IMG/VR virus record: IMGVR_UViG_3300035698_010479
Location: 164,459-228,458 of that record
Direction: 5' to 3' (one strand)
Length of the DNA stretch: 64,000 nt
The position numbers were made by a program, and so were the translations under genes. Below the pieces are notes generated by a model. It was not told where the DNA came from and made no database searches. It worked only from the letters and a program-made list of their open reading frames with translations. Positions 33,553 through 61,706 of this stretch are shown in pieces (position 1 is the first letter of the stretch; every line of letters begins with the position of its first letter).

Positions 33553-33714
33553 AGTTTTTCTCCTTATAAAAAAGTTATATGCTTATTCAATTAATTGTTT
33601 TTAAACACCGTTAGTTACTGTAGCAATACGGTGAAATTCACTTTATAGGTTAGTTTAGTTTTATTCCTTTTCCTTACCACTATACTACAGGTTAGTTAAT
33701 TACTTACATTAATA

Positions 33715-34575
33715 TTAGCAATATGAAACTAAATTAAAGCTTATTTTAGACCTATAAGCATTTAAGTCAGATAAAGTTGCCGACTCATTACGACTACTTA
33801 ATGTTAAGGGTAAATTTATATTTCTAGCTTCAACATCCTCAAATCTTAGATTTGATGTACCGCTTACAACTGTTCTATCAAATAAGTTAGTTGCCTTATC
33901 GTTACTATTTTTACTATTGTAAAATGTGCCATCAAAATCCAAAACAGACCCTCTTGGAAAATCATATATTGGACAGGTTTTTAAATATAAACTATCATAT
34001 ATCAATTCTGTTATATCAGCTCTTTCAGCGGATGATGATGCAAAAACAAATATATTACTCTTCCTAATTACCTTCTTACCTCCACCTAACTGAAATCCAG
34101 TTTTCTGTGTAGCAGCTATATCAATAACTACAACTGGTGCGGATGATGCGGATAATGAGCTCCACTCATCCACTAAACTTATATACTGCCAGTAAAAATC
34201 AATGTATTTAGGTTTTAAATAACTTGGTATAATTATCTTACCATCTATATAATCTACTCTATATAAATTACCACTTATCGTAGTTAATGAGTCATCATAT
34301 ATAGTAACTCTATTGGATTGTTCAGGTGTACCAGAAAAAGTTGTAGAACATATTAAAGATTCAGTAGATAAGTCATCAAAATATGCAATGCCTCTACCGT
34401 ATTCGAATGGAGATGGCTCAGCTGTTGTTATTATATCATAGACACTTAAAGAGTTATCTGACTTAACTCTGTTTAACACCAGTTCATCTTTATCTTGGTA
34501 CTCTATAAAATCAACTAGTACTAGGTCTCTTAGGTATCTATATACACTAAGATCTTCTTTTCGTATCTTATACAT
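33715..34575 (-). CDS. putative tail terminator/completion protein
   Basis: 286 aa, immediately before the tail tube gene; VVVIDI...FQLGG...NIFVFA...ERADITELIY pattern. Confidence 0.55.
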   Translation of the reverse strand: MYKIRKEDLSVYRYLRDLVLVDFIEYQDKDELVLNRVKSDNSLSVYDIITTAEPSPFEYGRGIAYFDDLSTESLICSTTFSGTPEQSNRVTIYDDSLTTISGNLYRVDYIDGKIIIPSYLKPKYIDFYWQYISLVDEWSSLSASSAPVVVIDIAATQKTGFQLGGGKKVIRKSNIFVFASSSAERADITELIYDSLYLKTCPIYDFPRGSVLDFDGTFYNSKNSNDKATNLFDRTVVSGTSNLRFEDVEARNINLPLTLSSRNESATLSDLNAYRSKISFNLVSYC

Positions 34576-35234
34576 TAATAAGCTCTCCTTTTTATATCTT
34601 CCAACGACTTATCAACAATCTTATTAGTTAGAGCTTCCTTGCTTTTATTAAAAAAGCCTTTACCATCTTCAAATAACTCTATGGCTTGGGTGTTAGAAAA
34701 TGGAAACCTTATAAGTTTTTTATTTAGTATATTTTGTAGTATACCATGAATATTTAAAGATTCATCAACCAAATAAAAGTCTAAATCATTTGTAATTTCA
34801 CCAAAAAATCCTGGAAGGTCTAATAGTGAATTTTTTATTTGCTTACTCAATTTTTCATAATTAATTAAATAATTATAATCATTTATTGGTAGTTCATAAT
34901 AACTATTTATAACACCAATAGATAACCAATGTAAGAATTTTAATCTTCCCTCAAATTCAAAATTATCTTCATCAGGCACAAGCATCTTAACTTCACCTTT
35001 AGCGGCTACTGAAACATATGTAAAATTATTTAATGCCTCTTCATACTCCTCATAGAATAATAAAGGATTAGCCAAACTACCTTCCTCTATATTATCCACT
35101 AGTAACAGGTCCGTATAGCTTTCCAAATATACTTCTTTAAGTTTAGGTAAAAAACTATCAAAAATATCTAACGTATTTATAAAAAGTAACTTCTCCAAGT
35201 CAACTGCTACTTTATCAGCACTACCTCTTTTCAC
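34575..35234 (-). CDS. putative head-tail/tail completion protein
   Basis: 219 aa; assigned from synteny only. Confidence 0.45.
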   Translation of the reverse strand: MKRGSADKVAVDLEKLLFINTLDIFDSFLPKLKEVYLESYTDLLLVDNIEEGSLANPLLFYEEYEEALNNFTYVSVAAKGEVKMLVPDEDNFEFEGRLKFLHWLSIGVINSYYELPINDYNYLINYEKLSKQIKNSLLDLPGFFGEITNDLDFYLVDESLNIHGILQNILNKKLIRFPFSNTQAIELFEDGKGFFNKSKEALTNKIVDKSLEDIKRRAY

Positions 35235-35818
35235 TAGTATTCCTTATCACTACTATTAGAGGGTGGTGATATATTATCTGATGTAAAAGCAAGCACTATT
35301 AGTAAAGCAGTTTCACCTATGCCTCTTAAAGTAGGTGGTTTAGACAAAACACATCTTGCCCCATCTACAACCATGTATGTACAGTTTGTAAATAATTCTT
35401 TGTATTTAGGTTCTATCTTTAACTCAACACTTGTACTACCTGAAAATCCTGGGGAATCACTTACAAGGGCCCCACCAGATTCTGGGTCCCAAGTTATTTT
35501 ACACTTAACCCAAACTTTGCGTATGGTTTCAAGAAAACCCTTACCTTTGCATATAGGACATCTACCTGTAGAAAAATATTTGTATTTCAGACCAGGGCCA
35601 CCTGATTGTATATACTCATTTTGTTTTTGTAGAGCTTCTGGTAATGTCCACTTACATGTATTTGTACTACTACTTGTAAGTTTATCAAAGAAACAATTAA
35701 AACATTCATGTTTTGTTGGCTGTTTAAAAACTTCAACAGGGCTACCTAAATCAGACATAATGTTTCTTATAACTTGAGTATATCTTTTTTTAGTGAAGGT
35801 ACTTATTCTTTTTCTCAT
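35234..35818 (-). CDS. putative head-closure protein with Zn-binding motifs
   Basis: 194 aa; contains CFNC and CPICKGKG; synteny after the adaptor. Confidence 0.5.
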   Translation of the reverse strand: MRKRISTFTKKRYTQVIRNIMSDLGSPVEVFKQPTKHECFNCFFDKLTSSSTNTCKWTLPEALQKQNEYIQSGGPGLKYKYFSTGRCPICKGKGFLETIRKVWVKCKITWDPESGGALVSDSPGFSGSTSVELKIEPKYKELFTNCTYMVVDGARCVLSKPPTLRGIGETALLIVLAFTSDNISPPSNSSDKEY

Positions 35819-35845
35819 TTCAAATCCTATAATTATTTAATTACA

Positions 35846-36802
35846 TTAATCTATTCTTACACCACCAAAACCAATAAATCTTTTTACTTTTACTGCCTCA
35901 TCTAGTTGCTTTTTCAATCTAGCTAATAATTTATCTCGTGCTACAAGACCAGCTGCAGGATTATATGTATCTCTACTATCCACAATTTCTGCGCCATCCT
36001 CGATTGCAAGCTCCCATAATTCACCACTTAAAATATCATAAGCAGTCTGTAGTAAATATATATCTTGTGTACAATTTGAAGTAGTTAAAGGTGCTGGAGG
36101 AGAACACGTATCATAAGCATCTAGTATTTGTTTATCACTATTTCTAAAAGTATAATACCACACATCTATAGTTTGAGGTACCCCGGATATGGTAGTATTA
36201 TTTAAATCAACTATAGAATTAAATTTTAAATATTTATAACCATTAACTGAAGGATCCACACTAGAGGTATATTGATTTCCGTATATGTTTATACTTGTTG
36301 GCCACCCTTTTTCCTCTAATTCAAATACCATAGAATTTGTATGGAAAGAGGCTAGTGCACCGTCCCCAAAAGATCTATGTAACTCAACTGGATCTCCAAT
36401 AAGAAGTCTTATTTTATTTACTAATAATTTATCTGACGTACCTAAGGAAGTCTCCGAGGGGTACATAGGATTATAATAAATAGAACCTATACTTCCTTGT
36501 ATAGGATCTGACCAACCACTACTAGAACTACCTACATTGTTAGAGTATCTAGTAATATACCAGCTATCGGCAGTGCCATCAGGGTCAACAAAATAATATT
36601 GGGTGAATGAGTGTGACAACAGAATATCACTTACATTATTTCTATTGTTCACTTGGTCTATACCGGTCAAAATAGTAGCAAATTGAGATTCATCTACAGG
36701 TATAGTTGGTGAGGAGCTTCCGATATAGCGAAGTATGTTGATCCTACTAAATACATATAAAACATCTACTATGTTATCTACGGTTATTGATAAATTTATC
36801 AT
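35846..36802 (-). CDS. putative head-tail adaptor/neck protein
   Basis: 318 aa, beta-rich N-terminus and helical C-terminus; synteny after the capsid. Confidence 0.5.
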   Translation of the reverse strand: MINLSITVDNIVDVLYVFSRINILRYIGSSSPTIPVDESQFATILTGIDQVNNRNNVSDILLSHSFTQYYFVDPDGTADSWYITRYSNNVGSSSSGWSDPIQGSIGSIYYNPMYPSETSLGTSDKLLVNKIRLLIGDPVELHRSFGDGALASFHTNSMVFELEEKGWPTSINIYGNQYTSSVDPSVNGYKYLKFNSIVDLNNTTISGVPQTIDVWYYTFRNSDKQILDAYDTCSPPAPLTTSNCTQDIYLLQTAYDILSGELWELAIEDGAEIVDSRDTYNPAAGLVARDKLLARLKKQLDEAVKVKRFIGFGGVRID

Positions 36803-36875
36803 AATTTGTTTAGACCCCGTTTATATGTAAAAGTTATTACCATATTATATAACTACTTTATTTTTAAATATACTT

Positions 36876-36909
36876 AAAAGGCCCACACAAAAATTATTAA
36901 GTATGGGCC
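36876..36909 (-). terminator. intrinsic terminator
   Basis: GGCCCATAC...GTGTGGGCC-TTTT on the minus strand. Confidence 0.6.
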
Positions 36910-36916
36910 AGTATTA

Positions 36917-37387
36917 TTATCCGTTTGGATGCATACTTAATTCCATTACACGCTTATCTATAATTCTACATAGAGATTCCTTATTAGGAAGTGGTTTACA
37001 TTCCCTTAAAGCAAACTTAAGAAGTTTAATATCCATAATACCAGGGATTATCTCTCTTGCTTTTCGTACTGGTAAGTTCATTACATCTTGTACACTCATC
37101 TTACTAGCTACTACATCTCCAGCACCATTAGTTTCATATTTAACTGTACTTGGTTCTTTTACTGCTGGCTCAACTGGTATATCTTCTTCCTCTACTATAA
37201 TCCAGTCGTCTGCAGTACCTCGTAGCTTAACTTCTCTTAACCACTTTACAAAGTCTTTTTCGCTGATGTTATGACGTTTACCGTATAGTGTATACAATTC
37301 ATCAAGTGGTACCTTACCACCAGGTCTAACACTCATCTTAAAAATATGTACCCAAGCAGTTTTTTTACTTTTTATGTATCCCTTCAT
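36917..37387 (-). CDS. hypothetical protein
   Basis: 156 aa, AAGGAG RBS. Confidence 0.65.
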   Translation of the reverse strand: MKGYIKSKKTAWVHIFKMSVRPGGKVPLDELYTLYGKRHNISEKDFVKWLREVKLRGTADDWIIVEEEDIPVEPAVKEPSTVKYETNGAGDVVASKMSVQDVMNLPVRKAREIIPGIMDIKLLKFALRECKPLPNKESLCRIIDKRVMELSMHPNG

Positions 37388-37407
37388 GACTTACTCCTTT
37401 TCCAAAA

Positions 37408-37728
37408 TTAATTTTCACTTCTCCTTGTCCGATCTATAAAATTATGTAATACATTTGAACTTTTATGAAGCAGTAATCCTATAATGAACCAATCTACCCA
37501 AAAACTTACTATATGTATATTTAGTACAACCAAACCAACTAATGTACCTGACCATACTGAGAAACATATTGGGCAATCAAGCAGATCGTGTATAAAGTTA
37601 AAAACTTTATTAGCTTTTCTTTTAAAAAACCACGCCCTAACTGGTTCAAATAAAACAGACTTAACAACAATGTCTGTTACTGTTTCAGTGAGTACCACTG
37701 ATATTAAAAATAGAATTATATTGTTCAT
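37408..37728 (-). CDS. small membrane protein, DUF1360-like
   Basis: 106 aa, 2-3 hydrophobic segments, LLDCPICFSVW motif resembling the DUF1360 CxxCxSVW signature. Confidence 0.6.
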   Translation of the reverse strand: MNNIILFLISVVLTETVTDIVVKSVLFEPVRAWFFKRKANKVFNFIHDLLDCPICFSVWSGTLVGLVVLNIHIVSFWVDWFIIGLLLHKSSNVLHNFIDRTRRSEN

Positions 37729-37871
37729 ATCATATAAAAGTTAGTTTATTGTGGATTAAAATGTTTTAATTGGGTTTACTACATTCTTTGGTATGCATAT
37801 CTTCTAATGTAATATCACTACTAACTATTAATATCAAATATAGTAATACGATTAAAAGTAGTAACTAAAAC

Positions 37872-37905
37872 AAAACCCACTACTAAATTAATAGTAGTGG
37901 GTTTT
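37872..37905. terminator. bidirectional intrinsic terminator after the major capsid gene
   Basis: Perfect 14-bp stem AAAACCCACTACTA-aattaa-TAGTAGTGGGTTTT. Confidence 0.85.
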
Positions 37906-37929
37906 ATAACTATATAATATTACTTAATA

Positions 37930-39003: not shown

Positions 39004-39072
39004 TGTAGCTCCTTTTATTGTATTTATTTATGGAAGGGTAGGTATTATCCTACCCCTTAATCCATGTGTTAT

Positions 39073-39699: not shown

Positions 39700-39716
39700 A
39701 TAATTTTCCTCCTCAA

Positions 39717-40424: not shown

Positions 40425-40508
40425 TATATTCCTCCTAATTAAATTCTAAATAAATTGTTTTATAACTAACCTAAGTTTACATTAATCCTATCCATGTCCA
40501 AACGTGGT

Positions 40509-41609: not shown

Positions 41610-43397
41610 TTATAATTTATCTTTTATATTAATAAGTTCTTGTATAAGCAAACCTACATCATCTTTAGACATGCTAGCTACTACACTATGTAAAGAATTA
41701 GGTGCTATAACCTCCTCATTAGCCTTTATTTTACTTGGGTCTGTTTCCGGTGTTTTTGTATTGGTGGTACCAGTAGGACGTCCTTTAGAAGGTGTACCAG
41801 TTGCGGAGTTTTGAACCTCTTGTAATGGTGCAGCTTGTTGAAATGGACTTCCTATTAAACCGAAGACACCTTTTTCTACTAAAGATAGCTCTTGTTCCAT
41901 ATTACCTAATTCATTAGTGTAGTCAAAACCCAAAGTCTCTAAAGCAGTTCTGTAAGATATCATACGTCTATCTACCATAGAAGCAATAACGTTTTTGTAT
42001 AGGATGTCATTTCTAAGTATATTTTCATCCCACCTAACTCTAGGGAACCTATCAAAACCCATAGCTTCAGCTATTTGTCTATACTCGTTATATATCCATC
42101 TAGTTACTTGTTTTCTAGCATAATCTATATCTTCTTTTACAGCACCTATAGCCCACTCTGATCCAGAAGTTACATTAGTGGCATCCAGTAAAGCTCTGGT
42201 AAATGATAAACCACCTGTGATATCTTCATTAACCTGCTCATACTTACCTTGACCTAAAATGGATTCTATTTCAGGACTTATTATTTTTTCTATTTTTAAT
42301 GTATGGTTCCATACAACATCAAAACTTTTACTAGGTGTATCAAACAGCTTAGCTACTGCCTCTAACTCTTCTTGTGATACCACCGGGAATTCATCATTAC
42401 CTATTGTAATTTTAAGGATATAGTTAGATATACCATCTAAAGTACTTAAATCAGCATTACGTAATGCTTTTTTATATTCTATACTTTCAAATACACGTGC
42501 TGTTCTAGGTCTAGCGTATCTTTCATAAGGTTGCTTTTTATATGTGATATTACCAACAAGTCTTGAGTCTAATAGATAATCACCACTACCAGATGCTGCT
42601 TTTTTAAGTTCCGTAGGTAATGACTTTATAAGTAGTTTTTCTTCATCTGTTAGTTCGGATGAATTTTTCTTCAACAAGTCCCCTAATTCTTTAGGTGGTG
42701 TAAGAGACACTGATACATTGTTGAACAATAGGTTACCTGTTATATTAACAAGGGTGGGATTCAGTACCGTATAACCTACTGGAAGGTGTCCTTTAGACCA
42801 AATTTTCTTTTTAGCTCCTGTGGCTAATTGACCTGTAGACTTTGTAGGAGTGGCTTTCTTTTTACCAACGGGTTGTATTGTGGAAATTCTAGGCTCATAG
42901 TTGGCTATATATTTATAAGTAGTTACATGAGAAGTTTTAAATAATTCTAAAAATATCCAATCAATTACTTCTTCGAAATTAACATCAAAGACCCAGGTAT
43001 CAAAAAAATTCTTAATATCAGGATCGTCTATATCATTTTCAAAACCTTTACAAGCTAGTGAGGAAAGTATATTAATAACTGAACCTACAATTGGTTCAGT
43101 GTAGTAATATCTCATTACCTTTTCATATAATATTTTTGGATCTTCATCATATACATCTTTACTCATACCAATGTCCAAATAGGACCTAGATAATGAATCT
43201 CTTGTAAGAGTAGAAGCGTGTTCTTTGTATGTGTGTGGTATTAACGGATTGTCAAGGAAAGCTAGAGCCTTTTTGGTTGGCTCAACAAGGAACGTAGTGG
43301 TTCCTGTGGATTCATTAACTGAAACCGACTTGATGCCTACATCTGGATAGCGTTCTTTTAATTCCGCAGTTATTTTATCTGAAACATTCGTATCCAT
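41610..43397 (-). CDS. portal protein
   Basis: 595 aa directly after TerL; typical helical portal patterns and a P/T-rich low-complexity C-terminus. Confidence 0.8.
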   Translation of the reverse strand: MDTNVSDKITAELKERYPDVGIKSVSVNESTGTTTFLVEPTKKALAFLDNPLIPHTYKEHASTLTRDSLSRSYLDIGMSKDVYDEDPKILYEKVMRYYYTEPIVGSVINILSSLACKGFENDIDDPDIKNFFDTWVFDVNFEEVIDWIFLELFKTSHVTTYKYIANYEPRISTIQPVGKKKATPTKSTGQLATGAKKKIWSKGHLPVGYTVLNPTLVNITGNLLFNNVSVSLTPPKELGDLLKKNSSELTDEEKLLIKSLPTELKKAASGSGDYLLDSRLVGNITYKKQPYERYARPRTARVFESIEYKKALRNADLSTLDGISNYILKITIGNDEFPVVSQEELEAVAKLFDTPSKSFDVVWNHTLKIEKIISPEIESILGQGKYEQVNEDITGGLSFTRALLDATNVTSGSEWAIGAVKEDIDYARKQVTRWIYNEYRQIAEAMGFDRFPRVRWDENILRNDILYKNVIASMVDRRMISYRTALETLGFDYTNELGNMEQELSLVEKGVFGLIGSPFQQAAPLQEVQNSATGTPSKGRPTGTTNTKTPETDPSKIKANEEVIAPNSLHSVVASMSKDDVGLLIQELINIKDKL

Positions 43398-43469
43398 AAT
43401 TTTCCCAATAAGTGTAATTAAATTTTATTATAAAAATAAATATGTAGTAGTCTAAATATACTAGTTAGT

Positions 43470-46400
43470 TTATTTCTTCCTAGTTAAAACAGCCATAGAT
43501 AAACTAGATGAAACACTATTTATACCTGTAGCAGCTGACCAATTAGAAGTGTTTCTGTTTCTAACTAATCCACCACTACTATGCATCGAGGTTTTTGATG
43601 TTTCGTCTACTATTTCATGGTCTAATGCTTTTACACCGTAACTTGCTAGTATTAAAGCAGAGTATATATCTTTGTTTTGTCCCTTCTTAGGTGTATCAAA
43701 GTGAAGAGATCCACCAGATGTTTGTGTTACAACTATGTTTAAACACTGTTTCTTTAACTCGTTTATTAAATCATACTCGTCTAGTATTAAGTCAGATACT
43801 ATATCTACTGGTACTATTGGAAATTGTAAATGACCATCTTCAAATAAAGATAGTGCTGCAAAGTTAGCGTCAGCTATCCAAGATGTACTAAATGTAATTA
43901 ACTCAAGAATTCTATTACCCTTTAAAGTTAGCGTGTCTTTATCATTTCTATTTAGTATTGGCTCAGCACCATTATAACCCTCTGCTAGTAAGTCTGCAAC
44001 GGATTTACCACCGCCTCCTCTATCCATAAATATACGTAATACATTATAACTACTACAAAGCTCTTGCAGAGACATAGTTATGTCTTGTGTTGTTCTGCCG
44101 TCTAAAGCTAGTACTCTCACTATCTTATTTGGTTTACCTAATTTAATTATTACCACACCACATTTTGCTTTACCACCCTGATTAGGATCTATACCTATTA
44201 TATAAGAAGAGCCTTTATCACCACTTAACTCAATAACATAATCCATTGTAGAGCATTTTTCTAGTATTGATGCTTTAAAGAATCCTTCAGAATCAGATAC
44301 CATGGCCCCTAAATATTCCATAGCAAATTCATGACTAGACATAACCCTTTCAGCGTTCTCGATATTTTTAGGGTCTAAGAAGCCGTCCGGTAGTGCTGTA
44401 TATGGTATTTGAAAAACAGCATGATCTTTAGAACCTTCCTCAATCTGATTCCAATACTCACGCATACGTTTGTACATATGATTAAACTTATAGTAACCAG
44501 AGGAAGTACCAATCATCTTGTTGATGGAGTCTTCTTCAAAATCATCTTCAAAAGCTAACCCTGCCTCTATTAAAGCAGTTCTTCTTTCTAACTCCCTGAC
44601 CTTTTTCATTGGATCTAGTTTAGTGATACTCATAGGAGCTAAAACTGTTTCAATTATCTTAGATGGTACTTGTGCAAACTCATCTACTATAACACAGTAA
44701 AAACGTGAACCACGAATCTTTCCACCATCAGCACCTAGAGGAAGAGCCTCTATAAAAGCACCATTATGGCCATTCACTGCTCTAAACTTTAAGTAGCACG
44801 TGTCCGAGCCTCTAATTGGCCGTTTCTCTGTAGCGGCCTTAAGTATAGGTGCACTGGTATAAAGTTTTTCTATCTCAGCAAATATCATTTTTGATTGCCT
44901 AAATGACGGGCCAATTAGACCCACACGATATCCTGGGTATAATAAGGCTAGTAGAGCAGATAATGTACCTGATAAGAATGTATTATGATTAATAAAACCA
45001 TTTGTCATATAATTAGGCTCAACTTCTGATTCCATATCCATCTCAAAGTCATAACAGTCACCTTTCCAATCTTCTATAGATACAACCGTGTCAAAGTAGT
45101 AATTATATCTTAGTATCTCTTTTAAATTGGTGATAAAATGTGATACCTGTTCTAAACTAAATCCCTTATCTTCTATGCTTGTACATTGCTCTAAAAATTC
45201 ATGCAGTTTAACATAAGTTAATTCTTTTTTATTATTAGTTTCTATATTAAAAGATGGCTTTTTAGATGTTCTGTAAGTAGTTTGATAATAAGTAGTTATA
45301 GCTTTACATACATGTAGTACATAAGGTACTGTATCTTTATTAGGATTTAATACCTTACTTGAAAAATAATTATTTAATATAGTTTGTTTTCTTTTTAATC
45401 TAAAACCTATAAGTTCTTTGAACTTATAGGCATCTTCAGAAAACATGTCTAATAAATAGGCTTTACCAAAATCTGACTTAGTCTTTTTCTCTCTAAGTCT
45501 AGCTATGATACCTAAGTTGAGTAGCATCATTTGAATCTCTTCCAACAATTGTCTAGACACAGAACAACAAGATACACCACCGTTGGTATTATGCACTGTA
45601 CCATCTGTGTCAAAATAACCTTGAAGGAAAGCAATTTGTGACTCTCTTTTAGAAGTACGTATAGAATATGGTACAGTTTTATCATATGCTAAAGTTATAG
45701 GTACTTTATATGTGTTTATAAACTTATTTATACCTTTAGCATAAAATATTACGTCGCATGTACATGACCCAGACTTGTAAGTTATATTATAATTAATATT
45801 ATTAAGTGTGCAAAAAGCAGCAGTAAAAGAAATTAAGTCTTCATCCTCGGAAGTTATAAAGGCACCTGAAATTTTTTTTCCAATATAACCATCCCCTATT
45901 AGTAAACCCAGTAAATACGCGTCATCTATAGGTACTTTATTAACACCAAAAACTTTTTGTCCTCTTTGAATACAGACTTTATCACCAACACTAAATTCGG
46001 CTAGTGTTTTATAAACAAAGTTACCTTCATAATCAATTGTAAGTAAAGGGTGATGATCGCTCCCTCTTTTAATAATACCGTTCTGTGTAATTAACTTCTT
46101 ACCTTGTATACCTTTTTCTAAACATAGTTTTTTAGTATTTCTAAAACCTTCTGATGTAAACATTTTGGTATTATAGTCAATAACTTCATCCTCCCCATCA
46201 GATAAGTATTCTGGTATCTCTGGGAGTACCTCATTTAGATATACAATACCTTTATTAAAATATGTAGTAATTTCACGTAAATATACCGATTTTCCAAAAC
46301 CCCTTGTAGCCACAGAAAGTGTATAAGGTTTGAACCACATAGCTTCAAATACTATACGTTGTACAGGAGCTAGGTCTACTCCTAAAAGTTCATAGGCAGC

Positions 46401-54109: not shown

Positions 54110-54115
54110 TAAATT

Positions 54116-55291: not shown

Positions 55292-55314
55292 TTTACTTCT
55301 CCTATATTAAATAT

Positions 55315-55575: not shown

Positions 55576-55778
55576 TTGGCTTTCTCCTTATGGGCTCTAG
55601 AAACGGTCTCTGGAGTTTTATGGGTTAATATCTTATTTTGCTTACGCATCCTCTTTATTTTACAATTAATAGAATCCTCATCTCTACCTGGAAGTTTATC
55701 CATTAGTTCAAAAACAGTATTCGTAGAATAGTTATCTATTAATATTTTTTCTTCTGAAAAATTCCACATTCGGCTCAT
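55572..55778 (-). CDS. Myb/SANT-like helix-turn-helix protein
   Basis: W..SEEKIL..Y......EL...LPGR...SI..K pattern. Confidence 0.6.
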   Translation of the reverse strand: MSRMWNFSEEKILIDNYSTNTVFELMDKLPGRDEDSINCKIKRMRKQNKILTHKTPETVSRAHKEKAK

Positions 55779-55968
55779 ATAGTTCCTCTTCTAAATAATC
55801 TGTCATTGAAGTACATATTTTTATATCATCTAATAAATTACGCATTATACGTAAGGTCTCTTCTTGTTCGGTTCCTTTTGCTATAACTATATCTATGTTA
55901 GATTCTAGATTACTAATAGTATTGTTTAAATCATTGATAGACCTTTTGCGTTGAAATAAATTCTCCAA
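55732..55968 (-). CDS. hypothetical coiled-coil protein
   Basis: 78 aa, TTG start, AGGAG upstream. Confidence 0.45.
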   Translation of the reverse strand: MENLFQRKRSINDLNNTISNLESNIDIVIAKGTEQEETLRIMRNLLDDIKICTSMTDYLEEELYEPNVEFFRRKNINR

Positions 55969-56047
55969 AGTATTTGTTTCTCCTAATAAGTTATTGTTAT
56001 TACAAAGTAGTTATAATAAACTAAACCTACAATAAAGCTTGGTTAGT

Positions 56048-56689
56048 TTAATTACCTCTAATACCCTGCCATGTTGGTTTATATGGTATTGCTGAATAAA
56101 CTATTACTTGTCCTGATGGCTCACTTAGCTCTACAGTTGATTTGTTTTGAAATACCATATTTAATACTGTAAAATATGAGGTTTCTTTAGCTATACTCAT
56201 TTGTTTATATTCTGGTACACTAATAGAATTAGTAAACTCAAATGTTGGCGTCTCAGTTATGAAGACTATAGTATCAGTAATTATTTCAGGATTTTTATAA
56301 CACCAACTAATTTTGAATGATATGGAAGATACAGTTATAAATAAATCTTTTGAAAAAACATTAACGCTAGCACCTTGGGCATTAACTCCTTTAATTAAAA
56401 CCATATAATAACCTGGTTCTAAGTTTGAGTAAGTTAAATTATTACCTGTAGTTGGTGTTGTTTCCAATAAGGTGTGTGTAATACCACCACAAGCAACACC
56501 TAAAGTTACTTTGTTTAACTCTATAATGTAAGAGCTATAAGTTATGGTTGGATTTTTCCAAAATACTGATAAAGCTTTAGCTTCATAATTATACACCCCA
56601 TATACGTCTACCTTCACTGAGTCGGCGTATATAGGGGTAGAAAATGCTAGCAAAAACACTACCAATATAAATAGTAGTCTCTTTATCAC
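56048..56689 (-). CDS. exported protein with Fn3/Ig-like domains
   Basis: Signal peptide MIKRLLFILVVFLLAFSTPIYA; W.NP...Y.IEL...L.PG.Y.V.I.G.N pattern. Confidence 0.6.
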   Translation of the reverse strand: MIKRLLFILVVFLLAFSTPIYADSVKVDVYGVYNYEAKALSVFWKNPTITYSSYIIELNKVTLGVACGGITHTLLETTPTTGNNLTYSNLEPGYYMVLIKGVNAQGASVNVFSKDLFITVSSISFKISWCYKNPEIITDTIVFITETPTFEFTNSISVPEYKQMSIAKETSYFTVLNMVFQNKSTVELSEPSGQVIVYSAIPYKPTWQGIRGN

Positions 56690-56693
56690 CAGT

Positions 56694-57029
56694 TTATTCC
56701 TTCAAGTGAATACCAGAGGGTAGTGGGGGTAATGTTTTTGCGTAAGAGAAAGGGACAGCAGTTGAACTACCCCACAAGTTGGTATAAGTTACGGCTACTA
56801 CGTTATTACCGTTTACAGAATTTTTAATATCGAATGTACAAATACTTTTTGTTTCGTCAGCTAAAATAGTTGGGGCTACGTCCACAGATGCTCCACTATT
56901 TAATGTGAATTTACAAGTAGTTACCACAGCAGTAGGAAATTCACCTGTGACAGCAAAAGGTGCTGATATAACTGTTGAAGCCGTACCTATGACTAGCAAC
57001 AGGGCCAAACCACTAATTAATTTCTTCAT
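56694..57029 (-). CDS. small exported beta-sandwich protein
   Basis: Signal peptide, two Cys, N.WG.S..VPF.Y.K..P..P C-terminus. Confidence 0.65.
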   Translation of the reverse strand: MKKLISGLALLLVIGTASTVISAPFAVTGEFPTAVVTTCKFTLNSGASVDVAPTILADETKSICTFDIKNSVNGNNVVAVTYTNLWGSSTAVPFSYAKTLPPLPSGIHLKE

Positions 57030-57125
57030 AATTTGTCCTCATAATTAATTTTATTAAATAAAACGTCAGTAAAATAAAATAACTTACTATTCTTATAACT
57101 AGTAAGTTAGTTTATTTTAGAATGT

Positions 57126-58427
57126 TTAAAATGTTTTATCTTGTAATTTTTCAGCCAGTTCTAATAGTTCACTTCTGTAAGAATATTTTAAATTAACATA
57201 AGCTAATGACTTATGTGGTAGTGCTCTAAGAAGTTTAAGCAAACCACTGTTAGATGGTTTTATACTATAGCTCTGTATCAAATCCCCTGTCATAATAATC
57301 TTGGACTCTTCTGTAGCCCTACTTAAACAAGCTGAAATTAAATCTATTGTACAAAGCTGCACTTCATCAAGAAGGAGGAAATCATCCATCAAACTTAACC
57401 CTTGTATACTATTGATGTCTATTAACTCAAAAAATTTATTAAATAGCTCTGTCTTAACAAAATCAAATGATTTACCCTCTTTAGATTGGCCTTTAGTATT
57501 ACCAAATAAGAAGTATAGGGAACTAAGAAAACCCATAGCCCATGAAAATAATTTATCATCCGTGTTTCCAGGAAGGAACCCAATATTATATCTATGGTCA
57601 ATGCCTATAGGAGGCCTACTAATAAATGTTTTTTTACTATTTTCAGCTAGTGCAAACGCAGAACTAATTAAGCTTTTACCAGACCCCCATTTTCCGGTAA
57701 TTAAAACATTATCTGCATTGGCTAACGCGTAGAATGCACATATTTGATATACATCTTTTGATTTTAGTTTGAAATTTGGTCCTTCTATAGTTCTATATTT
57801 AGGGTTGTTGTCTATCCTTTCTAGCATATATGTTTTAGGATTATTAGCATAAACACAAACGTCTTCATCATTTTCATCTCTAATAAACATAAAAAACCAG
57901 CTTTCACGTGTAACACCTTTATTATCTTCCAACCAAGTTAGTAATTGTTCATATTCACCCATGAAGTACTTTTGAAGAAAACAAAAAGCCTTAGGTATAC
58001 CGTTATCTCTAAACTCAGGTAACTGTGACTCACTTATATAAATATAAGGGTCAAATATACCATTAGCTATATTACCATACAATCTTACAGGTACTTCTTT
58101 ACTCTCAGCAATTATACTCATTGAAATATCTTTTGTGGCTATTGTAGCACCTGTTTTCTTTGCAGCAGCAATTATTAAATCATCATTACTAGAAATATCT
58201 TCTTGATTAACAACAAATTCTATTACACCTGGTCTAGTCTTTTTAAATTCTTTTATAGAGTTTATAGCAGCTCTAGCTGAGAAAGATAAATCTGGATTAA
58301 ATTTATGCTTATCTAACTCCTTTAATACTACTGATGATAATACTATCCCTGTATACTCTTTATTTAATTTAAATAATATATTAGGGTCATCCAATAACAG
58401 ATTAGTATCTACTAGTATTTTCGACAT
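57126..58427 (-). CDS. phoH: PIN-PhoH (PhoH2-type) RNase/ATPase
   Basis: PIN: ILVDTNLLL, ELD.HK, NDD.I, TKD..M; ATPase: GKWGSGKS, LLDEVQ, GDLIQ, RS.L. Confidence 0.88.
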   Translation of the reverse strand: MSKILVDTNLLLDDPNILFKLNKEYTGIVLSSVVLKELDKHKFNPDLSFSARAAINSIKEFKKTRPGVIEFVVNQEDISSNDDLIIAAAKKTGATIATKDISMSIIAESKEVPVRLYGNIANGIFDPYIYISESQLPEFRDNGIPKAFCFLQKYFMGEYEQLLTWLEDNKGVTRESWFFMFIRDENDEDVCVYANNPKTYMLERIDNNPKYRTIEGPNFKLKSKDVYQICAFYALANADNVLITGKWGSGKSLISSAFALAENSKKTFISRPPIGIDHRYNIGFLPGNTDDKLFSWAMGFLSSLYFLFGNTKGQSKEGKSFDFVKTELFNKFFELIDINSIQGLSLMDDFLLLDEVQLCTIDLISACLSRATEESKIIMTGDLIQSYSIKPSNSGLLKLLRALPHKSLAYVNLKYSYRSELLELAEKLQDKTF

Positions 58428-58436
58428 TGAGCCTCC

Positions 58437-58477
58437 AAAATAAAAAGACGCCAGTACTTACAATAAGTACTAGCGCC
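58437..58477 (-). terminator. intrinsic terminator
   Basis: 14-bp stem GGCGCTAGTACTTA-ttg-TAAGTACTGGCGTC followed by a U-tract. Confidence 0.75.
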
Positions 58478-58916
58478 CATTAGTATTGACACTTGGCAGT
58501 TTACTAAAAAACCATAAGTAAAGCCAAGCAATTAAGAAAACAACCAAACTTGATGTTACAATAACATATAGCTTCCTAACTAAATTATAAATATAAGTAA
58601 CTCTTGGTGCATTGAAGTCTGAACAAACCTTGATTAACATTTCTTGAAGTCTGGTTTCCATAATAGCCAGGTCATTTATAACTACCAACCCAAAAACTAT
58701 TAAAGAAGTAAGTATGAATGACACAAATATACCAATTGGTATATATAAATCACTTTCGTTAAAAATAGATCTTGCCGGGTAAACCTTTCCTAAAAGTGTA
58801 AGTATAAATAAATAAGAAGATAACCACCAAGCTAACCCAGAACTCCAGGCTAGGGTAATTAATGAGAAACTATTACTAATTACTATCTTATATACCTCCA
58901 AATCAATAGAATTCAT
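58470..58916 (-). CDS. multi-pass membrane protein
   Basis: 148 aa, three strongly hydrophobic segments. Confidence 0.65.
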   Translation of the reverse strand: MNSIDLEVYKIVISNSFSLITLAWSSGLAWWLSSYLFILTLLGKVYPARSIFNESDLYIPIGIFVSFILTSLIVFGLVVINDLAIMETRLQEMLIKVCSDFNAPRVTYIYNLVRKLYVIVTSSLVVFLIAWLYLWFFSKLPSVNTNGR

Positions 58917-59380
58917 TATTTAGTACTTTTAGGAAGTGCTTTTTTTGTACTACTTTTTATTTTAGATGGTGTTTTATTTGTTAAGTCATTAATATCATCA
59001 GGGTCATCTTCTAAATAGTCTATATCATTTCTATTTTTATTAATTCTACTTTGATTTGTCATAAGTAAATTTGATATGCTATTTAAATGATCTTTAACAT
59101 CCGAGTTTAACTCATGTACGGAATCTGATAATTCTACAAACTTATTAGTTATTTTTAATATACTCTCATCATGTCGTTGTTCTTTAAGTGCATATTTTTC
59201 AAAAGATTTATTTTGTAAAGTTTGCAGCACATTAATACGAGAATCCATGTGGAAATACAAACCTGTCATAGTGGCCATGTAAATAATAATTATATACACA
59301 GCAAACTTCTCGATTCTTAGTGCTAAGCTTGTCATGATATTAGTATCTCCAAAGTAATTATAAAATAAGTTTTCAGCCAA
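58916..59380 (-). CDS. single-pass membrane coiled-coil protein
   Basis: N-terminal TM segment then heptad-rich region. Confidence 0.6.
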   Translation of the reverse strand: MAENLFYNYFGDTNIMTSLALRIEKFAVYIIIIYMATMTGLYFHMDSRINVLQTLQNKSFEKYALKEQRHDESILKITNKFVELSDSVHELNSDVKDHLNSISNLLMTNQSRINKNRNDIDYLEDDPDDINDLTNKTPSKIKSSTKKALPKSTK

Positions 59381-59447
59381 TCTGAACCTTACACCTATTA
59401 TAGGTTACTTTAATTAAGAAGATACTAATACAGTTATGAGTACCCCC

Positions 59448-59795
59448 TTAATTACCGCTTAAAAGGCTATTTCTATATAATTTTTTTATTAATCTTACTT
59501 CTTCTATGAAACCGTCAATGTTTTCTGAGTTTGAAATAATTGCACCAGCGGCCAACTCAAAAAGAGTATTTTGTTTTGATACTAACAAATCAATTTCAGA
59601 TTCCTTCTGTTGTATTATATTGGCTTCCCAGGTGTTTAACACCATGTCCACGAATACCTCCTTGTTTGGCATCACGGATAGTAACTCTCTAAACATAACT
59701 AAAGTAATGGTTTCTATAAAGTCATTTGTAATCTGCCTAGGTTTGTTAGTTAGTTTTGATAATTCATACATAATTTTTGCACTGTTTTCATCCAT
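59448..59795 (-). CDS. hypothetical protein
   Basis: 115 aa, AGGAG RBS. Confidence 0.6.
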   Translation of the reverse strand: MDENSAKIMYELSKLTNKPRQITNDFIETITLVMFRELLSVMPNKEVFVDMVLNTWEANIIQQKESEIDLLVSKQNTLFELAAGAIISNSENIDGFIEEVRLIKKLYRNSLLSGN

Positions 59796-59808
59796 TGTAA
59801 TTCTCCTG

Positions 59809-60003
59809 TTAGTTTTTATAATCTAGATCTAAAACTGAAATTCTTCTGTTGGTTTGATCTTCATAAACATGTAAATTATCTACTAATGACATATGTCCTA
59901 TATGACCTACAAGTTCTGAAGTTCTTAAATTTGATTCTACCACATCTACATTAGTGTATTCATTAATAGGTTTTTTATTAGTCCTAAATATTTCTAATCC
60001 CAT
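59809..60003 (-). CDS. hypothetical protein
   Basis: 64 aa, AAGGAG RBS. Confidence 0.6.
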   Translation of the reverse strand: MGLEIFRTNKKPINEYTNVDVVESNLRTSELVGHIGHMSLVDNLHVYEDQTNRRISVLDLDYKN

Positions 60004-60088
60004 GGTATCTCCTTAAGTATATTATTGTACTACTAAGCTGTTTCAATAAAACATATTATAGTACTAATTCAACCATAAGTCAATTTAT

Positions 60089-60412
60089 TTAGAAGTATAC
60101 ATAAAATGTTATACCTACTCCTGCAGCTTCTCTATAATCCAATGATTCATGAATACTAAAGTTGTTAATTAGATATTCTTTAACAAATCCAATAGTTAAC
60201 TTTAAACCACAAGTATTATCTTGTGATATATTATATCTAATGTTGTATCCTAGTAAACCTAAGCCTTTAATGTGTTTGAAATTTTGGTCATTGTAAGATT
60301 CAGTACTTATGTCTTTGTAGAAACTATTAGAGCTAGCTATTGTGGAGTAACTTAGAATTAATGCTACTATTATAATCTGTAATGTCTTTAGTAGATTCAT
60401 ATTAATCACCAA
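60089..60412 (-). CDS. exported/outer-membrane-type hypothetical protein
   Basis: Signal-peptide-like N-terminus, beta-type body ending in Phe. Confidence 0.5.
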   Translation of the reverse strand: MVINMNLLKTLQIIIVALILSYSTIASSNSFYKDISTESYNDQNFKHIKGLGLLGYNIRYNISQDNTCGLKLTIGFVKEYLINNFSIHESLDYREAAGVGITFYVYF

Positions 60413-60529
60413 ATGTTAAACAACTTATATTAGATGTCTTTACTATAGTACATGTTATTTATTACTACTTATAATACATATTGTAATACAATAACTGTAC
60501 TACTTACTAATTTGTTAGAGTGAGTGCAG

Positions 60530-60810
60530 TGAGTACTTATGCCCCCATGTACGACTAAAAATAAAGAGGTGTCGCACATAAGGGGCAGAATAACTAACTA
60601 TTTGACTAACTTGTCGTCGGTCGTTTGTTTCGTTTTTTTAGGGGAATAACGTGCCCAGGTCTACCTTTACCACGCGAAGCCTAGTCCTATCACCAAGTCT
60701 TCTACCCCACATTCTGGATGTTTCCATCTAGGACGGCGGGATGCCAATTAAGTGCATCCTGTCAGGGTCTCCCTATTAATTTCATAGCCGGGCAACGCTA
60801 TACCTGCAAA
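60530..60810 (-). ncRNA. candidate structured non-coding RNA, unclassified
   Basis: GC-richer island without an ORF, containing many nested helices; G-U pairs favour the minus strand. Confidence 0.5.
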
Positions 60811-60901
60811 GTAAGTTATTTATTAAATAATTCCTAATGCACCCTCAAAGGCTTTACTAAAATCAGAGGGATTTAAATATAAAGATAAGTATGTATATAA
60901 C

Positions 60902-60930
60902 AGCGTAACAAATAAAATCTATAAAGTCAA
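60902..60930 (-). promoter_or_regulatory. sigma70-like promoter pointing into the structured island
   Basis: TTGACT-17 nt-TACGCT. Confidence 0.45.
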
Positions 60931-60945
60931 CACTTATTTTTTAAA

Positions 60946-61086
60946 TTAGAAGGCTCCGTTATGAATAAGGATTATTAAAGATACGAAAGAAGTTACTATA
61001 CTGAGGGCAGCGAGAGCTAATAGTACCAAATTTGTTTTAGCTTGCTGCTCTGCTACCCATGAAGGTGATCTGTGTCGTGTGTTCAT
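60946..61086 (-). CDS. small single-pass membrane protein (46 aa), absent from the ORF track
   Basis: MNTRHRSPSWVAEQQAKTNLVLLALAALSIVTSFVSLIILIHNGAF; AGAGAG upstream; follows the TAACTAAC motif. Confidence 0.5.
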   Translation of the reverse strand: MNTRHRSPSWVAEQQAKTNLVLLALAALSIVTSFVSLIILIHNGAF

Positions 61087-61116
61087 GTATATCTCTCTGG
61101 TTAGTTAAAAGAAATT

Positions 61117-61149
61117 AAAAAGGGTACTACTTAATTTTAGTAGTACCCT
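61117..61149 (-). terminator. intrinsic terminator after the lipoprotein gene
   Basis: AGGGTACTACT-7 nt-AGTAGTACCCT plus a U-tract. Confidence 0.8.
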
Positions 61150-61157
61150 CACTCTTG

Positions 61158-61616
61158 TTACTTGATCACTAAACCAATTCTTGCTTTGGCTGTTGCATTT
61201 ACAATCTCAACTACTTTCCAAGCTACGACTAACTTTTCATCAGGTAGTATACCTTGTACATCTAATTTTTGAGCTATACTAGCTTTTACTACCTCTACCA
61301 AATCATTAAATGATTGTAGTGTTAAAGGATCTAAATTTAACTTAGCTGTTTCAATAGCTAGTGCTGAATCTAAGCTGCTTAATTCAATAATCTCTATAGT
61401 GTTATCATCTCTTAGAGCCAATAAAGCGCTTGTTACTTCAAAAGCCGGAATAACCGTTTTTGGATAAGCCGCCATAGATGCTCCTACAGAAAGCTGGATA
61501 ACTGCGGCCTCCACTGGGTCAATTTTACCATCACCAATAGTTGATGTACCATCAGTAGCACATCCTTGCAGCGCCAAAAATACACACATTACCAACCCAA
61601 TTATGAGTTTTTTCAT
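61158..61616 (-). CDS. lipoprotein
   Basis: MKKLIIGLVMCVFLALQG-C signal II-like N-terminus. Confidence 0.75.
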   Translation of the reverse strand: MKKLIIGLVMCVFLALQGCATDGTSTIGDGKIDPVEAAVIQLSVGASMAAYPKTVIPAFEVTSALLALRDDNTIEIIELSSLDSALAIETAKLNLDPLTLQSFNDLVEVVKASIAQKLDVQGILPDEKLVVAWKVVEIVNATAKARIGLVIK

Positions 61617-61697
61617 ATACTTCTCCTTTTATTTTCTTTTGAAACAGCATTACCACCATGGTATTACTGTTGTATCTCCTCCTATAATTATACGTCA

Positions 61698-61706
61698 GTT
61701 AGTTTA
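61698..61706 (-). promoter_or_regulatory. TAAACTAAC motif (representative copy; see findings)
   Basis: Same 9-mer at 33649, 37740, 43464, 56042 and 57106; here followed by TATAAT and AGGAGG. Confidence 0.5.

What the first reader, a model, noticed from the sequence alone, without database searches (positions are those of the whole stretch)
33649..61706. Recurring strand-specific TAAACTAAC motif in intergenic gaps: candidate phage late promoter
Seen: exact minus-strand TAAACTAAC at plus-strand 33649-57, 37740-48, 43464-72, 56042-50, 57106-14 and 61698-706, plus TTAACTAAC at 33691 and 61100 and TTAACTGAC at 31878. All lie in or at the edge of intergenic gaps upstream of minus-strand genes (tail tube, DUF1360, portal and others), and several are followed by a TATA-like word. 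By base composition roughly one exact copy per strand is expected in 64 kb (rough estimate). Caveats: two copies overlap TAA stops, and a reverse-oriented look-alike sits near 40465. Inference: a recognition site for a phage RNAP, sigma factor or late activator.
Basis: partly seen in the sequence, partly recalled or inferred. Interest (0 to 1): 0.6.

Follow-up and report, generated by a model that had tools for sequence, protein, structure and literature searches.

The report
Conserved promoter motif of a jumbo phage
A 12-base word that recurs, always in gene orientation, in the gaps before tail, portal, membrane-protein and tRNA genes of an uncultured 228-kb salt-lake phage is very probably that phage family's own promoter, but no RNA data exist to prove it or to say which polymerase reads it.

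Summary
All six listed TAAACTAAC copies exist on the minus strand, plus a seventh inside a coding region at 7960.

The true unit is a 12-mer, AATWAASTRACY. It is followed by an A/T-only stretch and a TAG about 10-12 nt downstream.
- Window: 6 copies against 0.83 expected, all minus-strand and intergenic.
- Four whole genomes of this phage family: 17 of 21 strict copies lie in gene-oriented intergenic DNA (about 4% of sequence space), and none is antisense.

The motif is kept upstream of orthologous tail-tube-like, portal-like and DUF1360 genes while the flanks diverge. In some relatives it is held inside a coding region by rare synonymous codons.

It ends 15-17 nt before two tRNA genes. No long ORF but one isolated case starts before position 22-23, where the TAG peaks. 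Canonical terminators precede it.

I read it as a core promoter, at about -23 to -12, plus an initiator, for tRNA and middle/late genes.

The phage has no detectable sigma factor or T7-type polymerase. It does encode a 1,085-aa single-chain two-barrel RNA polymerase and a 7,473-aa tape-measure protein with an RNAP active-site motif.

Which enzyme reads the motif, and its temporal class, remain inferred. No RNA data exist.

The parts
31877..31888 (-). Motif copy AATTAACTGACT (variant, G at position 9). TAG follows at positions 19-21 and 22-24. It lies upstream of the 80-aa ORF 31577-31819 and the operon that runs into the giant ORF.
   Evidence: In one search it lies just downstream of the terminator hairpin 31900-31931 found.
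33690..33701 (-). Motif copy AATTAACTAACC, the first of tandem copies upstream of the 529-aa tail-tube-like gene 31963-33552.
   Evidence: Orthologous copies in relatives are shown. The tube-like assignment comes and is only a lead.
33648..33659 (-). Second copy, ACTAAACTAACC. The 9-mer is exact but the 5' AAT flank is missing. It lies upstream of the same gene. A third, core-only AACTAAC sits at 33610-33616.
37739..37750 (-). Motif copy AATAAACTAACT. The ATG of the DUF1360 gene (37408-37728) begins at motif position 23 and no Shine-Dalgarno sequence is present, so a leaderless mRNA is predicted.
   Evidence: DUF1360 assignment: Pfam. The same 10-nt gap in relatives L189, L190 and L195.
37870..37907 (-). 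Canonical intrinsic terminator after the major-capsid gene. It lies about 120 nt upstream of the 37739 motif.
43463..43474 (-). Motif copy AATAAACTAACT. It overlaps the TAA stop of the terminase-like ORF and lies upstream of the portal-like gene 41610-43397. TAG follows at positions 21-23.
   Evidence: Footprint alignment. Relatives. Portal lead. Terminase.
56041..56052 (-). Motif copy ATTAAACTAACC. It overlaps the TAA stop of the 213-aa ORF and lies upstream of the 78-aa ORF 55732-55968. It forms the 5' arm of an imperfect hairpin. TAG follows at positions 24-26.
57105..57116 (-). Motif copy AATAAACTAACT. It lies 11 nt after the PhoH-like gene and upstream of the 111-aa ORF 56694-57029. Its 3' end is part of an A/T-rich hairpin followed by a T-run.
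   Evidence: PhoH assignment.
61099..61110 (-). Motif copy TTTTAACTAACC, which lacks the AAT flank. It follows terminator hairpin 61122-61148. The ATG of a 47-codon ORF sits at position 25.
61697..61708 (-). Motif copy AATAAACTAACT. It lies 467 nt after the previous gene and 80 nt before the 152-aa ORF 61158-61616. TAG follows at positions 25-27.
7960..7968 (-). Exact 9-mer inside the repeat-rich C-terminal part of the giant ORF. It has no AAT flank and is probably a chance or non-functional copy.
40463..40471 (+). Reverse-oriented TAACTAACC in the gap 40425-40508. It lacks the AAT flank and its function is unknown.
7311..29732 (-). Context: a 7,473-aa ORF with a tape-measure domain and an RNAP-type DYDGD site. 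It is a candidate virion RNA polymerase. Its orthologues in three relatives are preceded by variants of the motif.

Best explanation
The motif is the upstream half of a phage-specific core promoter.

**Consensus.** It reads 5'-AAT-W-AA-S-T-R-AC-Y (positions 1-12), then weak T13/T15, T17-A18, an A/T-only stretch to position 24, and a TAG starting at position 22-24 followed by purines.

**Inferred initiation point.** I infer that transcription starts at the A or G of that TAG. That places the 12-mer at about -23 to -12 and the A/T stretch over the region to be melted.

**What it drives.** It drives the tail-tube-like, portal-like and DUF1360 genes, several small ORFs, the operon that runs into the giant tape-measure gene, and two tRNA islands. 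The helicase, RNAP, DNA polymerase and RNR genes lack it. A middle/late class is therefore likely.

**Shown:** the sequence statistics, the conservation and the positional constraints.

**Inferred:** that it is a promoter, where the start site is, and the temporal class.

I favour the phage's own 1,085-aa single-chain two-barrel RNA polymerase (roughly 0.4). Host RNAP redirected by an undetected phage factor comes second.
For: **Strand and location bias**
- In four whole genomes, 17 of 21 strict 12-mers are intergenic and co-oriented with the next gene. Four are sense-coding and none is antisense. That class makes up about 4.3% of sequence space. In G000 the score is 8 of 8.
- The motif words are the most frequent non-Shine-Dalgarno 10-mers in upstream gaps.

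**Conservation at orthologous sites with diverged flanks**
- Upstream of the tube-like gene: 20 of 37 non-redundant loci have a sense copy within 600 nt. The antisense strand has 0, and two control windows inside the gene have 0 and 1.
- Upstream of the portal-like gene, down to about 65% aa identity.
- Upstream of the DUF1360 gene.

**Constraint inside a coding region**
- In 14 distinct relatives the upstream gene encodes N-K-L-T with AAT AAA CTA ACY.
- Leu is CTA in 12 of 14, against 10% background usage. Thr is ACC in 12 of 14, against 17%.
- Neighbouring synonymous sites vary freely.

**Start-site proxies**
- TAG starts at position 22-24 in 63 of 122 sites, against 1-5 at other positions.
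- The first long-ORF start falls before position 22-23 at only one of 122 sites (position 16, probably a spurious ORF call). Leaderless-type ATGs sit exactly at positions 23-26.
- The motif ends 17 nt before tRNA-Leu in G000 and 15 nt before tRNA-Thr in G001.

**Order relative to terminators**
- Canonical hairpin-plus-T-run terminators precede the motif in three window gaps.
- One copy sits in a divergent gap in G004, where no co-oriented upstream gene exists.

**Transcription machinery**
- No Sigma70_r2 or r4 match was found.
- No T7-type RNAP was found, and phage T7 served as a positive control for that search.
- A 1,085-aa ORF carries beta-type and beta'-type double-psi barrels and a DFDGD motif.
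Against: - **No transcript data.** Only DNA runs from salt-lake metagenomes hold the phage. No 5' end has been mapped.
- **Closeness to the upstream stop.** The motif often sits within a few nt of, or on, the upstream stop codon. The median stop-to-motif distance is 4 nt. An element tied to gene ends would also fit this. I attribute it to compact gaps and to the two out-of-frame TAAs inside the motif.
- **Hairpins in two window copies.** Copies 56042 and 57106 are part of hairpins. The one at 57106 is followed by a T-run.
- **Variable spacing.** The distance to the TAG varies by about +/-2 nt, and several window copies have no TAG in range.
- **Not only structural genes.** Sites also precede small ORFs of unknown function, so 'late' is not established.
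- **RNAP gene not found everywhere.** The nvRNAP gene was not found in relatives G001 and G004, which are incomplete contigs. Motif and enzyme therefore cannot yet be shown to co-occur.
Confidence: 0.7

Rival explanations
1. It is a promoter, but it is read by the host RNA polymerase after redirection by a phage-encoded specificity factor or activator. That factor is too divergent to detect. This would resemble T4 gp55/gp33 at TATAAATA, or host RNAP on the late genes of Thermus phage P23-45.
For: - In the closest architectural analogue, P23-45, a TMP-fused virion RNAP and a single-chain nvRNAP transcribe pre-early and early genes. Late genes are left to host RNAP (PMC10770324).
- Canonical intrinsic terminators, typical of multisubunit RNAPs, are enriched in the structural module: 19 against 7.6 expected.
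- At least one good sigma-70-type promoter exists in the window, in gap 60004-60088. Host RNAP is therefore probably used at some stage.
Against: - No sigma-70 region 2 or region 4 match occurs in six-frame searches of G000, and the control genomes ring.
- There is no conserved -35-like block upstream of the motif, and no -10 hexamer at sigma-70 spacing.
- Sigma-70-type matches are not enriched: 82 against 89 expected.
Confidence: 0.2
2. It is an RNA-level signal rather than a start site. It could be a sequence-specific processing site that cuts polycistronic transcripts upstream of genes and tRNAs. It could also be a sequence-specific pause or termination signal for a phage RNAP.
For: - The motif commonly lies at or just after the stop codon of the upstream gene.
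- There is a modest excess of dyad symmetry between positions 11 and 36, with z = -8.8 against column shuffles.
- Two window copies form hairpins.
- Phage P23-45 has a conserved 26-nt motif at some termination sites.
- Cleavage 10 nt downstream of the motif could also generate leaderless mRNAs and tRNA precursors.
Against: - The consensus after the motif is A/T-rich and then purine-rich. It has no U-run and no hairpin in a fixed register.
- Canonical terminators occur separately and upstream of the motif.
- One copy lies 467 nt after the previous gene but 80 nt before the next.
- One copy sits in a divergent gap.
- A copy kept inside a coding region about 190 nt before that gene's end would truncate or cleave the gene's own mRNA.
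Confidence: 0.07
3. It is a compositional by-product. An A/T-rich word carrying TAA in two reading frames accumulates at gene ends and in gaps, without any regulatory function.
For: - The word contains two out-of-frame TAAs.
- Two window copies supply the upstream gene's stop codon.
- The bare 9-mer count is only marginally above shuffles: 7 against 2.28, with 3 of 100 shuffles reaching 7.
- One-mismatch variants are not enriched: 51 against 49 expected.
Against: - Single-base variants of the core show no comparable intergenic bias: 3-11% against 16.5% for AACTAAC.
- The 12-mer is never antisense in 21 copies.
- It is conserved at orthologous sites, and by synonymous-codon choice inside a gene.
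- It has a phased downstream TAG.
- It precedes tRNA genes, where translation stops are irrelevant.
Confidence: 0.03

Closest known systems
T7-group single-subunit RNAP promoters (for example T7 TAATACGACTCACTATAG, from my own knowledge)
   Same: - One contiguous, strand-specific recognition block lies immediately upstream of a short A/T-rich melting segment and a purine start.
- No -35 element is present.
- Copies sit in short gaps before late genes, often just after terminators.
   Different: - No T7-type polymerase gene is detectable in G000 or in the complete relative G002. The same search finds T7's own gene at E 1e-109.
- The sequence differs, and the block sits further upstream (about -23 to -12, inferred).
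Late promoters of jumbo-phage non-virion RNAPs: AR9 A(-11)ACA-N6-T-A/G(+1) and phiKZ T(-3)ATG(+1) (PMC7598289)
   Same: - These are promoters of phage-encoded two-barrel RNAPs that lack a -35 element.
- They combine a short upstream word with a conserved T-A-G/ATG-type initiator.
- They drive late and virion genes.
   Different: - Those enzymes are split multisubunit beta/beta' assemblies. The candidate here is a single 1,085-aa chain.
- The upstream word here is longer (12 nt) and further from the presumed start.
- No uracil-DNA dependence is implied.
- The start site here is inferred, not mapped.
Thermus phage P23-45 two-polymerase system: tape-measure-fused virion RNAP gp96 plus single-chain nvRNAP gp64, each with its own promoter motif (PMC10770324)
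   Same: - The gene inventory matches. There is a giant tape-measure ORF carrying a DxDGD two-barrel signature, and a separate roughly 1,100-aa single-chain two-barrel RNAP.
- The PDB profile search lists the gp96 fragment 8h2n among the weak hits.
   Different: - In P23-45 both phage enzymes serve pre-early and early genes, and host RNAP transcribes late genes. Here the motif sits before structural and tRNA genes.
- The P23-45 motifs are described only as AT-rich and GC-rich, so I could not compare the sequences.
- Sequence similarity between the enzymes is marginal.
T4 late promoters (TATAAATA, gp55/gp33/gp45; from my own knowledge)
   Same: - A short, -35-less element lies upstream of structural genes.
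- In T4 such elements also lie upstream of intron or free-standing homing-endonuclease ORFs. Compare the copy before the ORF inserted in the split RNR gene here.
   Different: - T4 late promoters need a sigma-like factor on host RNAP, and none was detected here.
- The element here is at about -23 to -12, not at -10.
N4 virion-RNAP hairpin promoters (from my own knowledge)
   Same: Weak excess dyad symmetry is found just downstream of the motif. The phage carries a giant virion-associated polymerase candidate.
   Different: - The symmetry has no fixed register and is only modestly above control. Stems of 5 bp or more number 61, against about 41 expected.
- The motif precedes structural genes, not early genes.

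Membership tests
Phage-specific (non-sigma-70) promoter | Strand-specific over-representation in non-coding DNA upstream of co-oriented genes | tested here: met
   - Window: 6 against 0.83 expected, all minus-strand and intergenic.
- Four genomes: 17 of 21 copies intergenic-sense and 0 antisense.
- It is the top-ranked intergenic k-mer.
Phage-specific (non-sigma-70) promoter | Conservation at orthologous upstream positions while flanking non-coding DNA diverges | tested here: met
   - Orthologous sites.
- Synonymous-codon constraint where the motif is embedded in a gene.
Phage-specific (non-sigma-70) promoter | Primary transcript 5' ends at a fixed distance from the motif | not testable with these tools
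   - No RNA run holds the sequence.
- Only proxies are available: a TAG peak at positions 22-24, a lower bound of ORF starts at positions 22-23, and tRNA 5' ends 15-17 nt after the motif.
Phage-specific (non-sigma-70) promoter | A cognate phage-encoded polymerase or specificity factor that binds the motif | tested here: inconclusive
   - Two candidate RNAPs are encoded.
- No link between either enzyme and the motif could be tested.
Late temporal class | Restricted to genes expressed late (virion and lysis genes) and absent from early or replication genes | tested here: inconclusive
   - Present before the tube-like, portal-like and DUF1360 genes and the operon of the tape-measure gene.
- Absent from gaps around the helicase, RNAP, DNA polymerase and RNR genes.
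- Also present before tRNAs and small ORFs of unknown function.
- No expression data exist.
Sigma-70-type promoter | A -35 and a -10 hexamer separated by 16-18 nt | tested here: not met
   - No information content is found 15-25 nt upstream of the motif, and there is no fixed hexamer pair.
- The consensus scan shows no enrichment: 82 against 89.
T7-group promoter | A T7-type single-subunit RNAP encoded by the phage | tested here: not met
   PF00940 is absent from G000 and from the complete relative G002 at E<=10. It is found in phage T7 at E 1e-109.
Intrinsic terminator | A G+C-rich hairpin followed by a T-run | tested here: not met
   - The downstream consensus is A/T-only and then purine-rich.
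- Stems are not in a fixed register.
- True terminators lie upstream of the motif.
- Copy 57106 is the only one followed by a hairpin plus T-run.

The most novel reading that the evidence does not exclude
The motif is the promoter of the 1,085-aa single-chain two-barrel RNA polymerase. In this widespread uncultured jumbo-phage family that enzyme would have taken over middle/late and tRNA transcription. A roughly 7,500-aa tape-measure-fused virion polymerase would start the infection. The cycle would then be largely independent of host RNAP, run by two single-chain enzymes. This would also be the first sequence-defined promoter for this enzyme lineage.
Probability: 0.3. Interest if true: 0.65.

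Novelty: new member of a known kind. Interest (0 to 1): 0.45.

Why it matters
- **A testable promoter for an uncharacterised phage family.** Phage-specific promoters are well known. This one gives a precise, testable consensus (12-mer, A/T stretch, TAG) for a large phage family with no cultured close relative. The capsid gene finds 278 IMG/VR stretches. Its nearest isolates, Bacillus phage G and Tunturi_5, share only about 23-25% identity.
- **An entry point to new polymerases.** The family carries a tape-measure-fused RNAP candidate and a single-chain two-barrel RNAP. Such a pairing has so far been studied only in Thermus phage P23-45. The motif would let the polymerase be assayed in vitro without the unknown host.
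- **Possible uses.** It could help define operons and temporal classes in these genomes. If the enzyme is orthogonal, it could provide a compact polymerase-promoter pair.

Tried and rejected
- **RNA evidence.** The look-up of sequencing runs returned only DNA runs from salt-lake metagenomes, kept as contigs. Read laying was therefore not used, because contigs cannot show starts.
- **De novo EM motif search.** An EM seeded on the motif drifted into the Shine-Dalgarno signal and was discarded. I used anchored counts instead.
- **N4-like hairpin promoter.** Excess dyad symmetry exists, but it is modest and has no fixed register. I kept it only as a minor feature.
- **Sigma-70 reading of copy 43464.** TTTAGA-18-TATAAT lies downstream of this copy. 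The motif-to-TATAAT distance is not kept in relatives, so I rejected it.
- **A distinct early-promoter motif.** None emerged by eye or by k-mers in the plus-strand block.
- **Rfam.** There was no hit in the window.
- **Downstream gene annotation.** PHROGs and Pfam left most downstream genes unannotated.
- **RNAP relatives.** The RNAP found no match in GenBank phages. The word-based locus search found only one close relative.
- **Literature.** Searches for the motif string found nothing relevant. The 'moraphage' paper (PMC12619734) reports neither an RNAP nor a tape-measure gene in its lineage. I could not establish whether that lineage is the same as this one.
- **Genetic code.** No alternative genetic code was applied, despite the tRNA with anticodon CUA.

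Full report
**Setting**

The window is the last 64 kb (164459-228458) of a 228,458-bp IMG/VR virus record that is estimated 86% complete. The G+C content is about 34%. Genes form a plus-strand block from 1 to 71.6 kb and a long minus-strand block from 71.6 to 227 kb.

In the window the minus-strand array contains:
- a terminase-like gene and a major-head gene;
- a portal-like and a tail-tube-like gene, which are atlas leads only;
- a DUF1360 gene;
- a PhoH-like gene;
- one ORF of 7,473 aa.

Only DNA runs from salt-lake metagenomes hold the sequence. The nearest isolates by capsid are Bacillus phage G and Tunturi_5, at 23-25% identity. IMG/VR, by contrast, holds 278 capsid-matching stretches.

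**Observation**

All six listed TAAACTAAC copies are present on the minus strand. A seventh lies inside the giant ORF at 7960. Shuffles give 2.28 copies for both strands, and 3 of 100 shuffles reach 7. One-mismatch variants are not enriched, at 51 against 49 expected. The bare 9-mer count is therefore only suggestive.

The signal sharpens once context is used:
- In the whole genome TAAACTAAC is the most enriched 9-mer in gene-oriented intergenic DNA (7 of 10 copies). TTAACTAAC follows with 5 of 6 copies.
- Aligning the copies shows a 5' AAT flank and a 3' pyrimidine.
- The 12-mer AATWAASTRACY occurs six times in the window against 0.83 expected. No shuffle of 100 reaches 6. All six are minus-strand and intergenic.

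**Family-wide statistics**

I fetched three related genomes in full: G001 (234 kb), G002 (269 kb, complete) and G004 (189 kb). Genes were called with a simple ORF/Shine-Dalgarno heuristic.

- AAT[AT]AACTAAC[CT] occurs 21 times in the four genomes. Seventeen copies are intergenic and co-oriented with the next gene, four are in sense coding sequence, and none is antisense. That intergenic-sense class is about 4.3% of positions.
- Single-base variants of the core lack this bias.
- The motif words are the most frequent 10-mers in upstream gaps, level with Shine-Dalgarno words.

**Conservation**

- *Tube-like gene.* In 37 non-redundant loci, 20 carry a sense copy within 600 nt upstream. The opposite strand has none, and two control windows inside the gene have 0 and 1.
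- *Portal-like gene.* The motif is kept in relatives down to about 65% protein identity. It forms the only conserved island in the gap. More distant relatives have no gap there and no motif.
- *DUF1360 gene.* The motif is kept, with a motif-to-ATG distance of 10-25 nt.
- *Embedded copy.* In many relatives a copy lies inside the gene upstream of the tube gene, encoding N-K-L-T. Across 14 distinct sequences Leu is CTA in 12 (10% background usage) and Thr is ACC in 12 (17% background). Adjacent synonymous sites vary. This points to selection on the nucleotide word itself. The window's own gene has only a 7-mer core there, shifted by 2 nt. I do not count that as a site.

**Anatomy downstream**

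These figures come from 122 non-redundant sites.
- Positions 1-12 are the motif.
- T13, T17 and A18 are favoured.
- Positions 19-24 are almost free of G and C.
- Positions 25-28 are purine-rich.
- TAG starts at position 22, 23 or 24 in 63 of the 122 sites, against 1-5 at other positions.
- Apart from one site at position 16, the first start codon of a long ORF never lies before position 22-23. ATGs without a Shine-Dalgarno sequence sit at positions 23-26. These include the window's DUF1360 gene (ATG at 37728, which is position 23) and the ORF after copy 61100 (position 25).
- The motif ends 17 nt before tRNA-Leu in G000 (42733) and 15 nt before tRNA-Thr in G001.

Together these facts place any start site within about 11 nt after the 12-mer. 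They fit initiation at the A or G of the TAG.

**Terminators and gap position**

- Canonical hairpin-plus-T-run terminators are enriched, at 19 against 7.6 expected.
- In three window gaps the terminator lies upstream of the motif: 31820-31962, 37729-37929 and 61087-61157.
- Copy 61697 lies 467 nt after the previous gene and 80 nt before the next. A copy in G004 lies in a divergent gap.
- Against this, the median distance from the upstream stop codon is only 4 nt. Copies 56042 and 57106 are part of hairpins.
- Dyad symmetry between positions 11 and 36 is above column-shuffled controls (z = -8.8). It is weak and has no fixed register.

**Which polymerase**

- Six-frame searches find no Sigma70_r2 or r4 match.
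- They find no T7-type RNAP either. Phage T7 served as a positive control for that search.
- One ORF of 1,085 aa (G000:23334-26591, plus strand) has an Rpb2_6-type barrel at residues 301-464. It also has an Rpb1_2-type barrel at residues 723-829, with GLDFDGD at residue 809.
- PHROGs call both parts RNAP beta subunit.
- A four-sequence profile hits almost only RNAP beta, Rpb1 or A' chains in the PDB. E-values are marginal, from 0.012. The hits include the P23-45 tape-measure RNAP fragment 8h2n at E 0.74.
- The giant ORF carries KLDYDGDQ at residue 2286. Giant ORFs of four of the five relatives searched give the same Rpb1_2 hit, down to E 1.6e-5. G001 gave no Pfam hit, but tblastn aligns its giant ORF across this region.
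- The giant ORF also has a clear tape-measure domain at about residues 3444-3737.

This is the layout of Thermus phage P23-45 (PMC10770324).

**Temporal class**

- The motif is absent from the gaps around the RNAP, helicase, DNA polymerase and RNR genes.
- Variants of the motif precede the giant tape-measure gene in three relatives. This fits a class expressed after the non-virion enzyme is made.
- In P23-45, however, late genes use host RNAP.

**Verdict**

The finding is real. It is best read as the core promoter of a phage-specific transcription class that serves tRNA genes and middle/late, largely virion, genes. It is a new member of a known kind. The polymerase assignment and the start site are inferences that need RNA 5'-end mapping or in vitro transcription.

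Noticed in passing
window 7311-29732 (-): A single 7,473-aa ORF combines a tape-measure domain with an RNA-polymerase beta'-type DYDGD site.
- The tape-measure domain lies at about aa 3444-3737 (Pfam E 1e-24, PHROG E 6e-77).
- The DYDGD site is at aa 2286.
- Giant ORFs of relatives G002-G005 give the same Rpb1_2 hit.
- It looks like a tape-measure-fused virion RNAP, as in Thermus phage P23-45 gp96, but in a 228-kb jumbo phage and half as long again.
   Followed up: partly
G000:C1:23334-26591 (+), outside the window (locus L064): A 1,085-aa single-chain two-barrel RNA polymerase, with a beta-type barrel, then a beta'-type barrel, and DFDGD at residue 809.
- It has no match in GenBank phages.
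- Homologues are present in G002 (45% identity), G003 and one IMG/VR contig.
   Followed up: partly
G000:C1:82246-82322 (-), outside the window: A tRNA with anticodon CUA, which would read TAG, lies among 15 phage tRNAs. TAG still ends 32 of 225 called genes and ORFs look intact under code 11. I therefore did not apply another genetic code.
   Followed up: partly
G000:C1:108421-112482 (-), outside the window: The ribonucleotide reductase large subunit is split into an N-terminal gene (111226-112482) and a C-terminal gene (108421-110148). An unannotated 337-aa ORF sits between them and is preceded by a motif copy (TTTAACTAACT). This could be a mobile-element insertion with its own promoter.
   Followed up: partly
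window 60004-60088 (-): A near-consensus sigma-70-type promoter (TTGACT, 17 nt, TATAAT) lies upstream of the 64-aa ORF 59809-60003. This suggests that some genes near this end of the contig use host RNAP.
   Followed up: no
window 60401-60945 (-): A 545-nt gap without an ORF is unusually G+C-rich for this genome. A 281-nt stretch folds somewhat better than shuffles (z = -2.6). There is no Rfam match. It may be a non-coding RNA.
   Followed up: partly
window 61617-62174: A 558-nt non-coding gap holds tandem repeats: a 16-nt unit TACTATAGCTTTTAAG, TACTA runs and a GTA run. It lies upstream of motif copy 61697. It could be an origin, a packaging site or a regulatory region.
   Followed up: no
G004 19430-19464 (loci L079/L080 region): A perfect 13-bp inverted repeat contains the motif and its reverse complement (TTAACTAACCTTC ... 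GAAGGTTAGTTAA) in one gap. It could be a bidirectional site or a terminator built from the motif.
   Followed up: no
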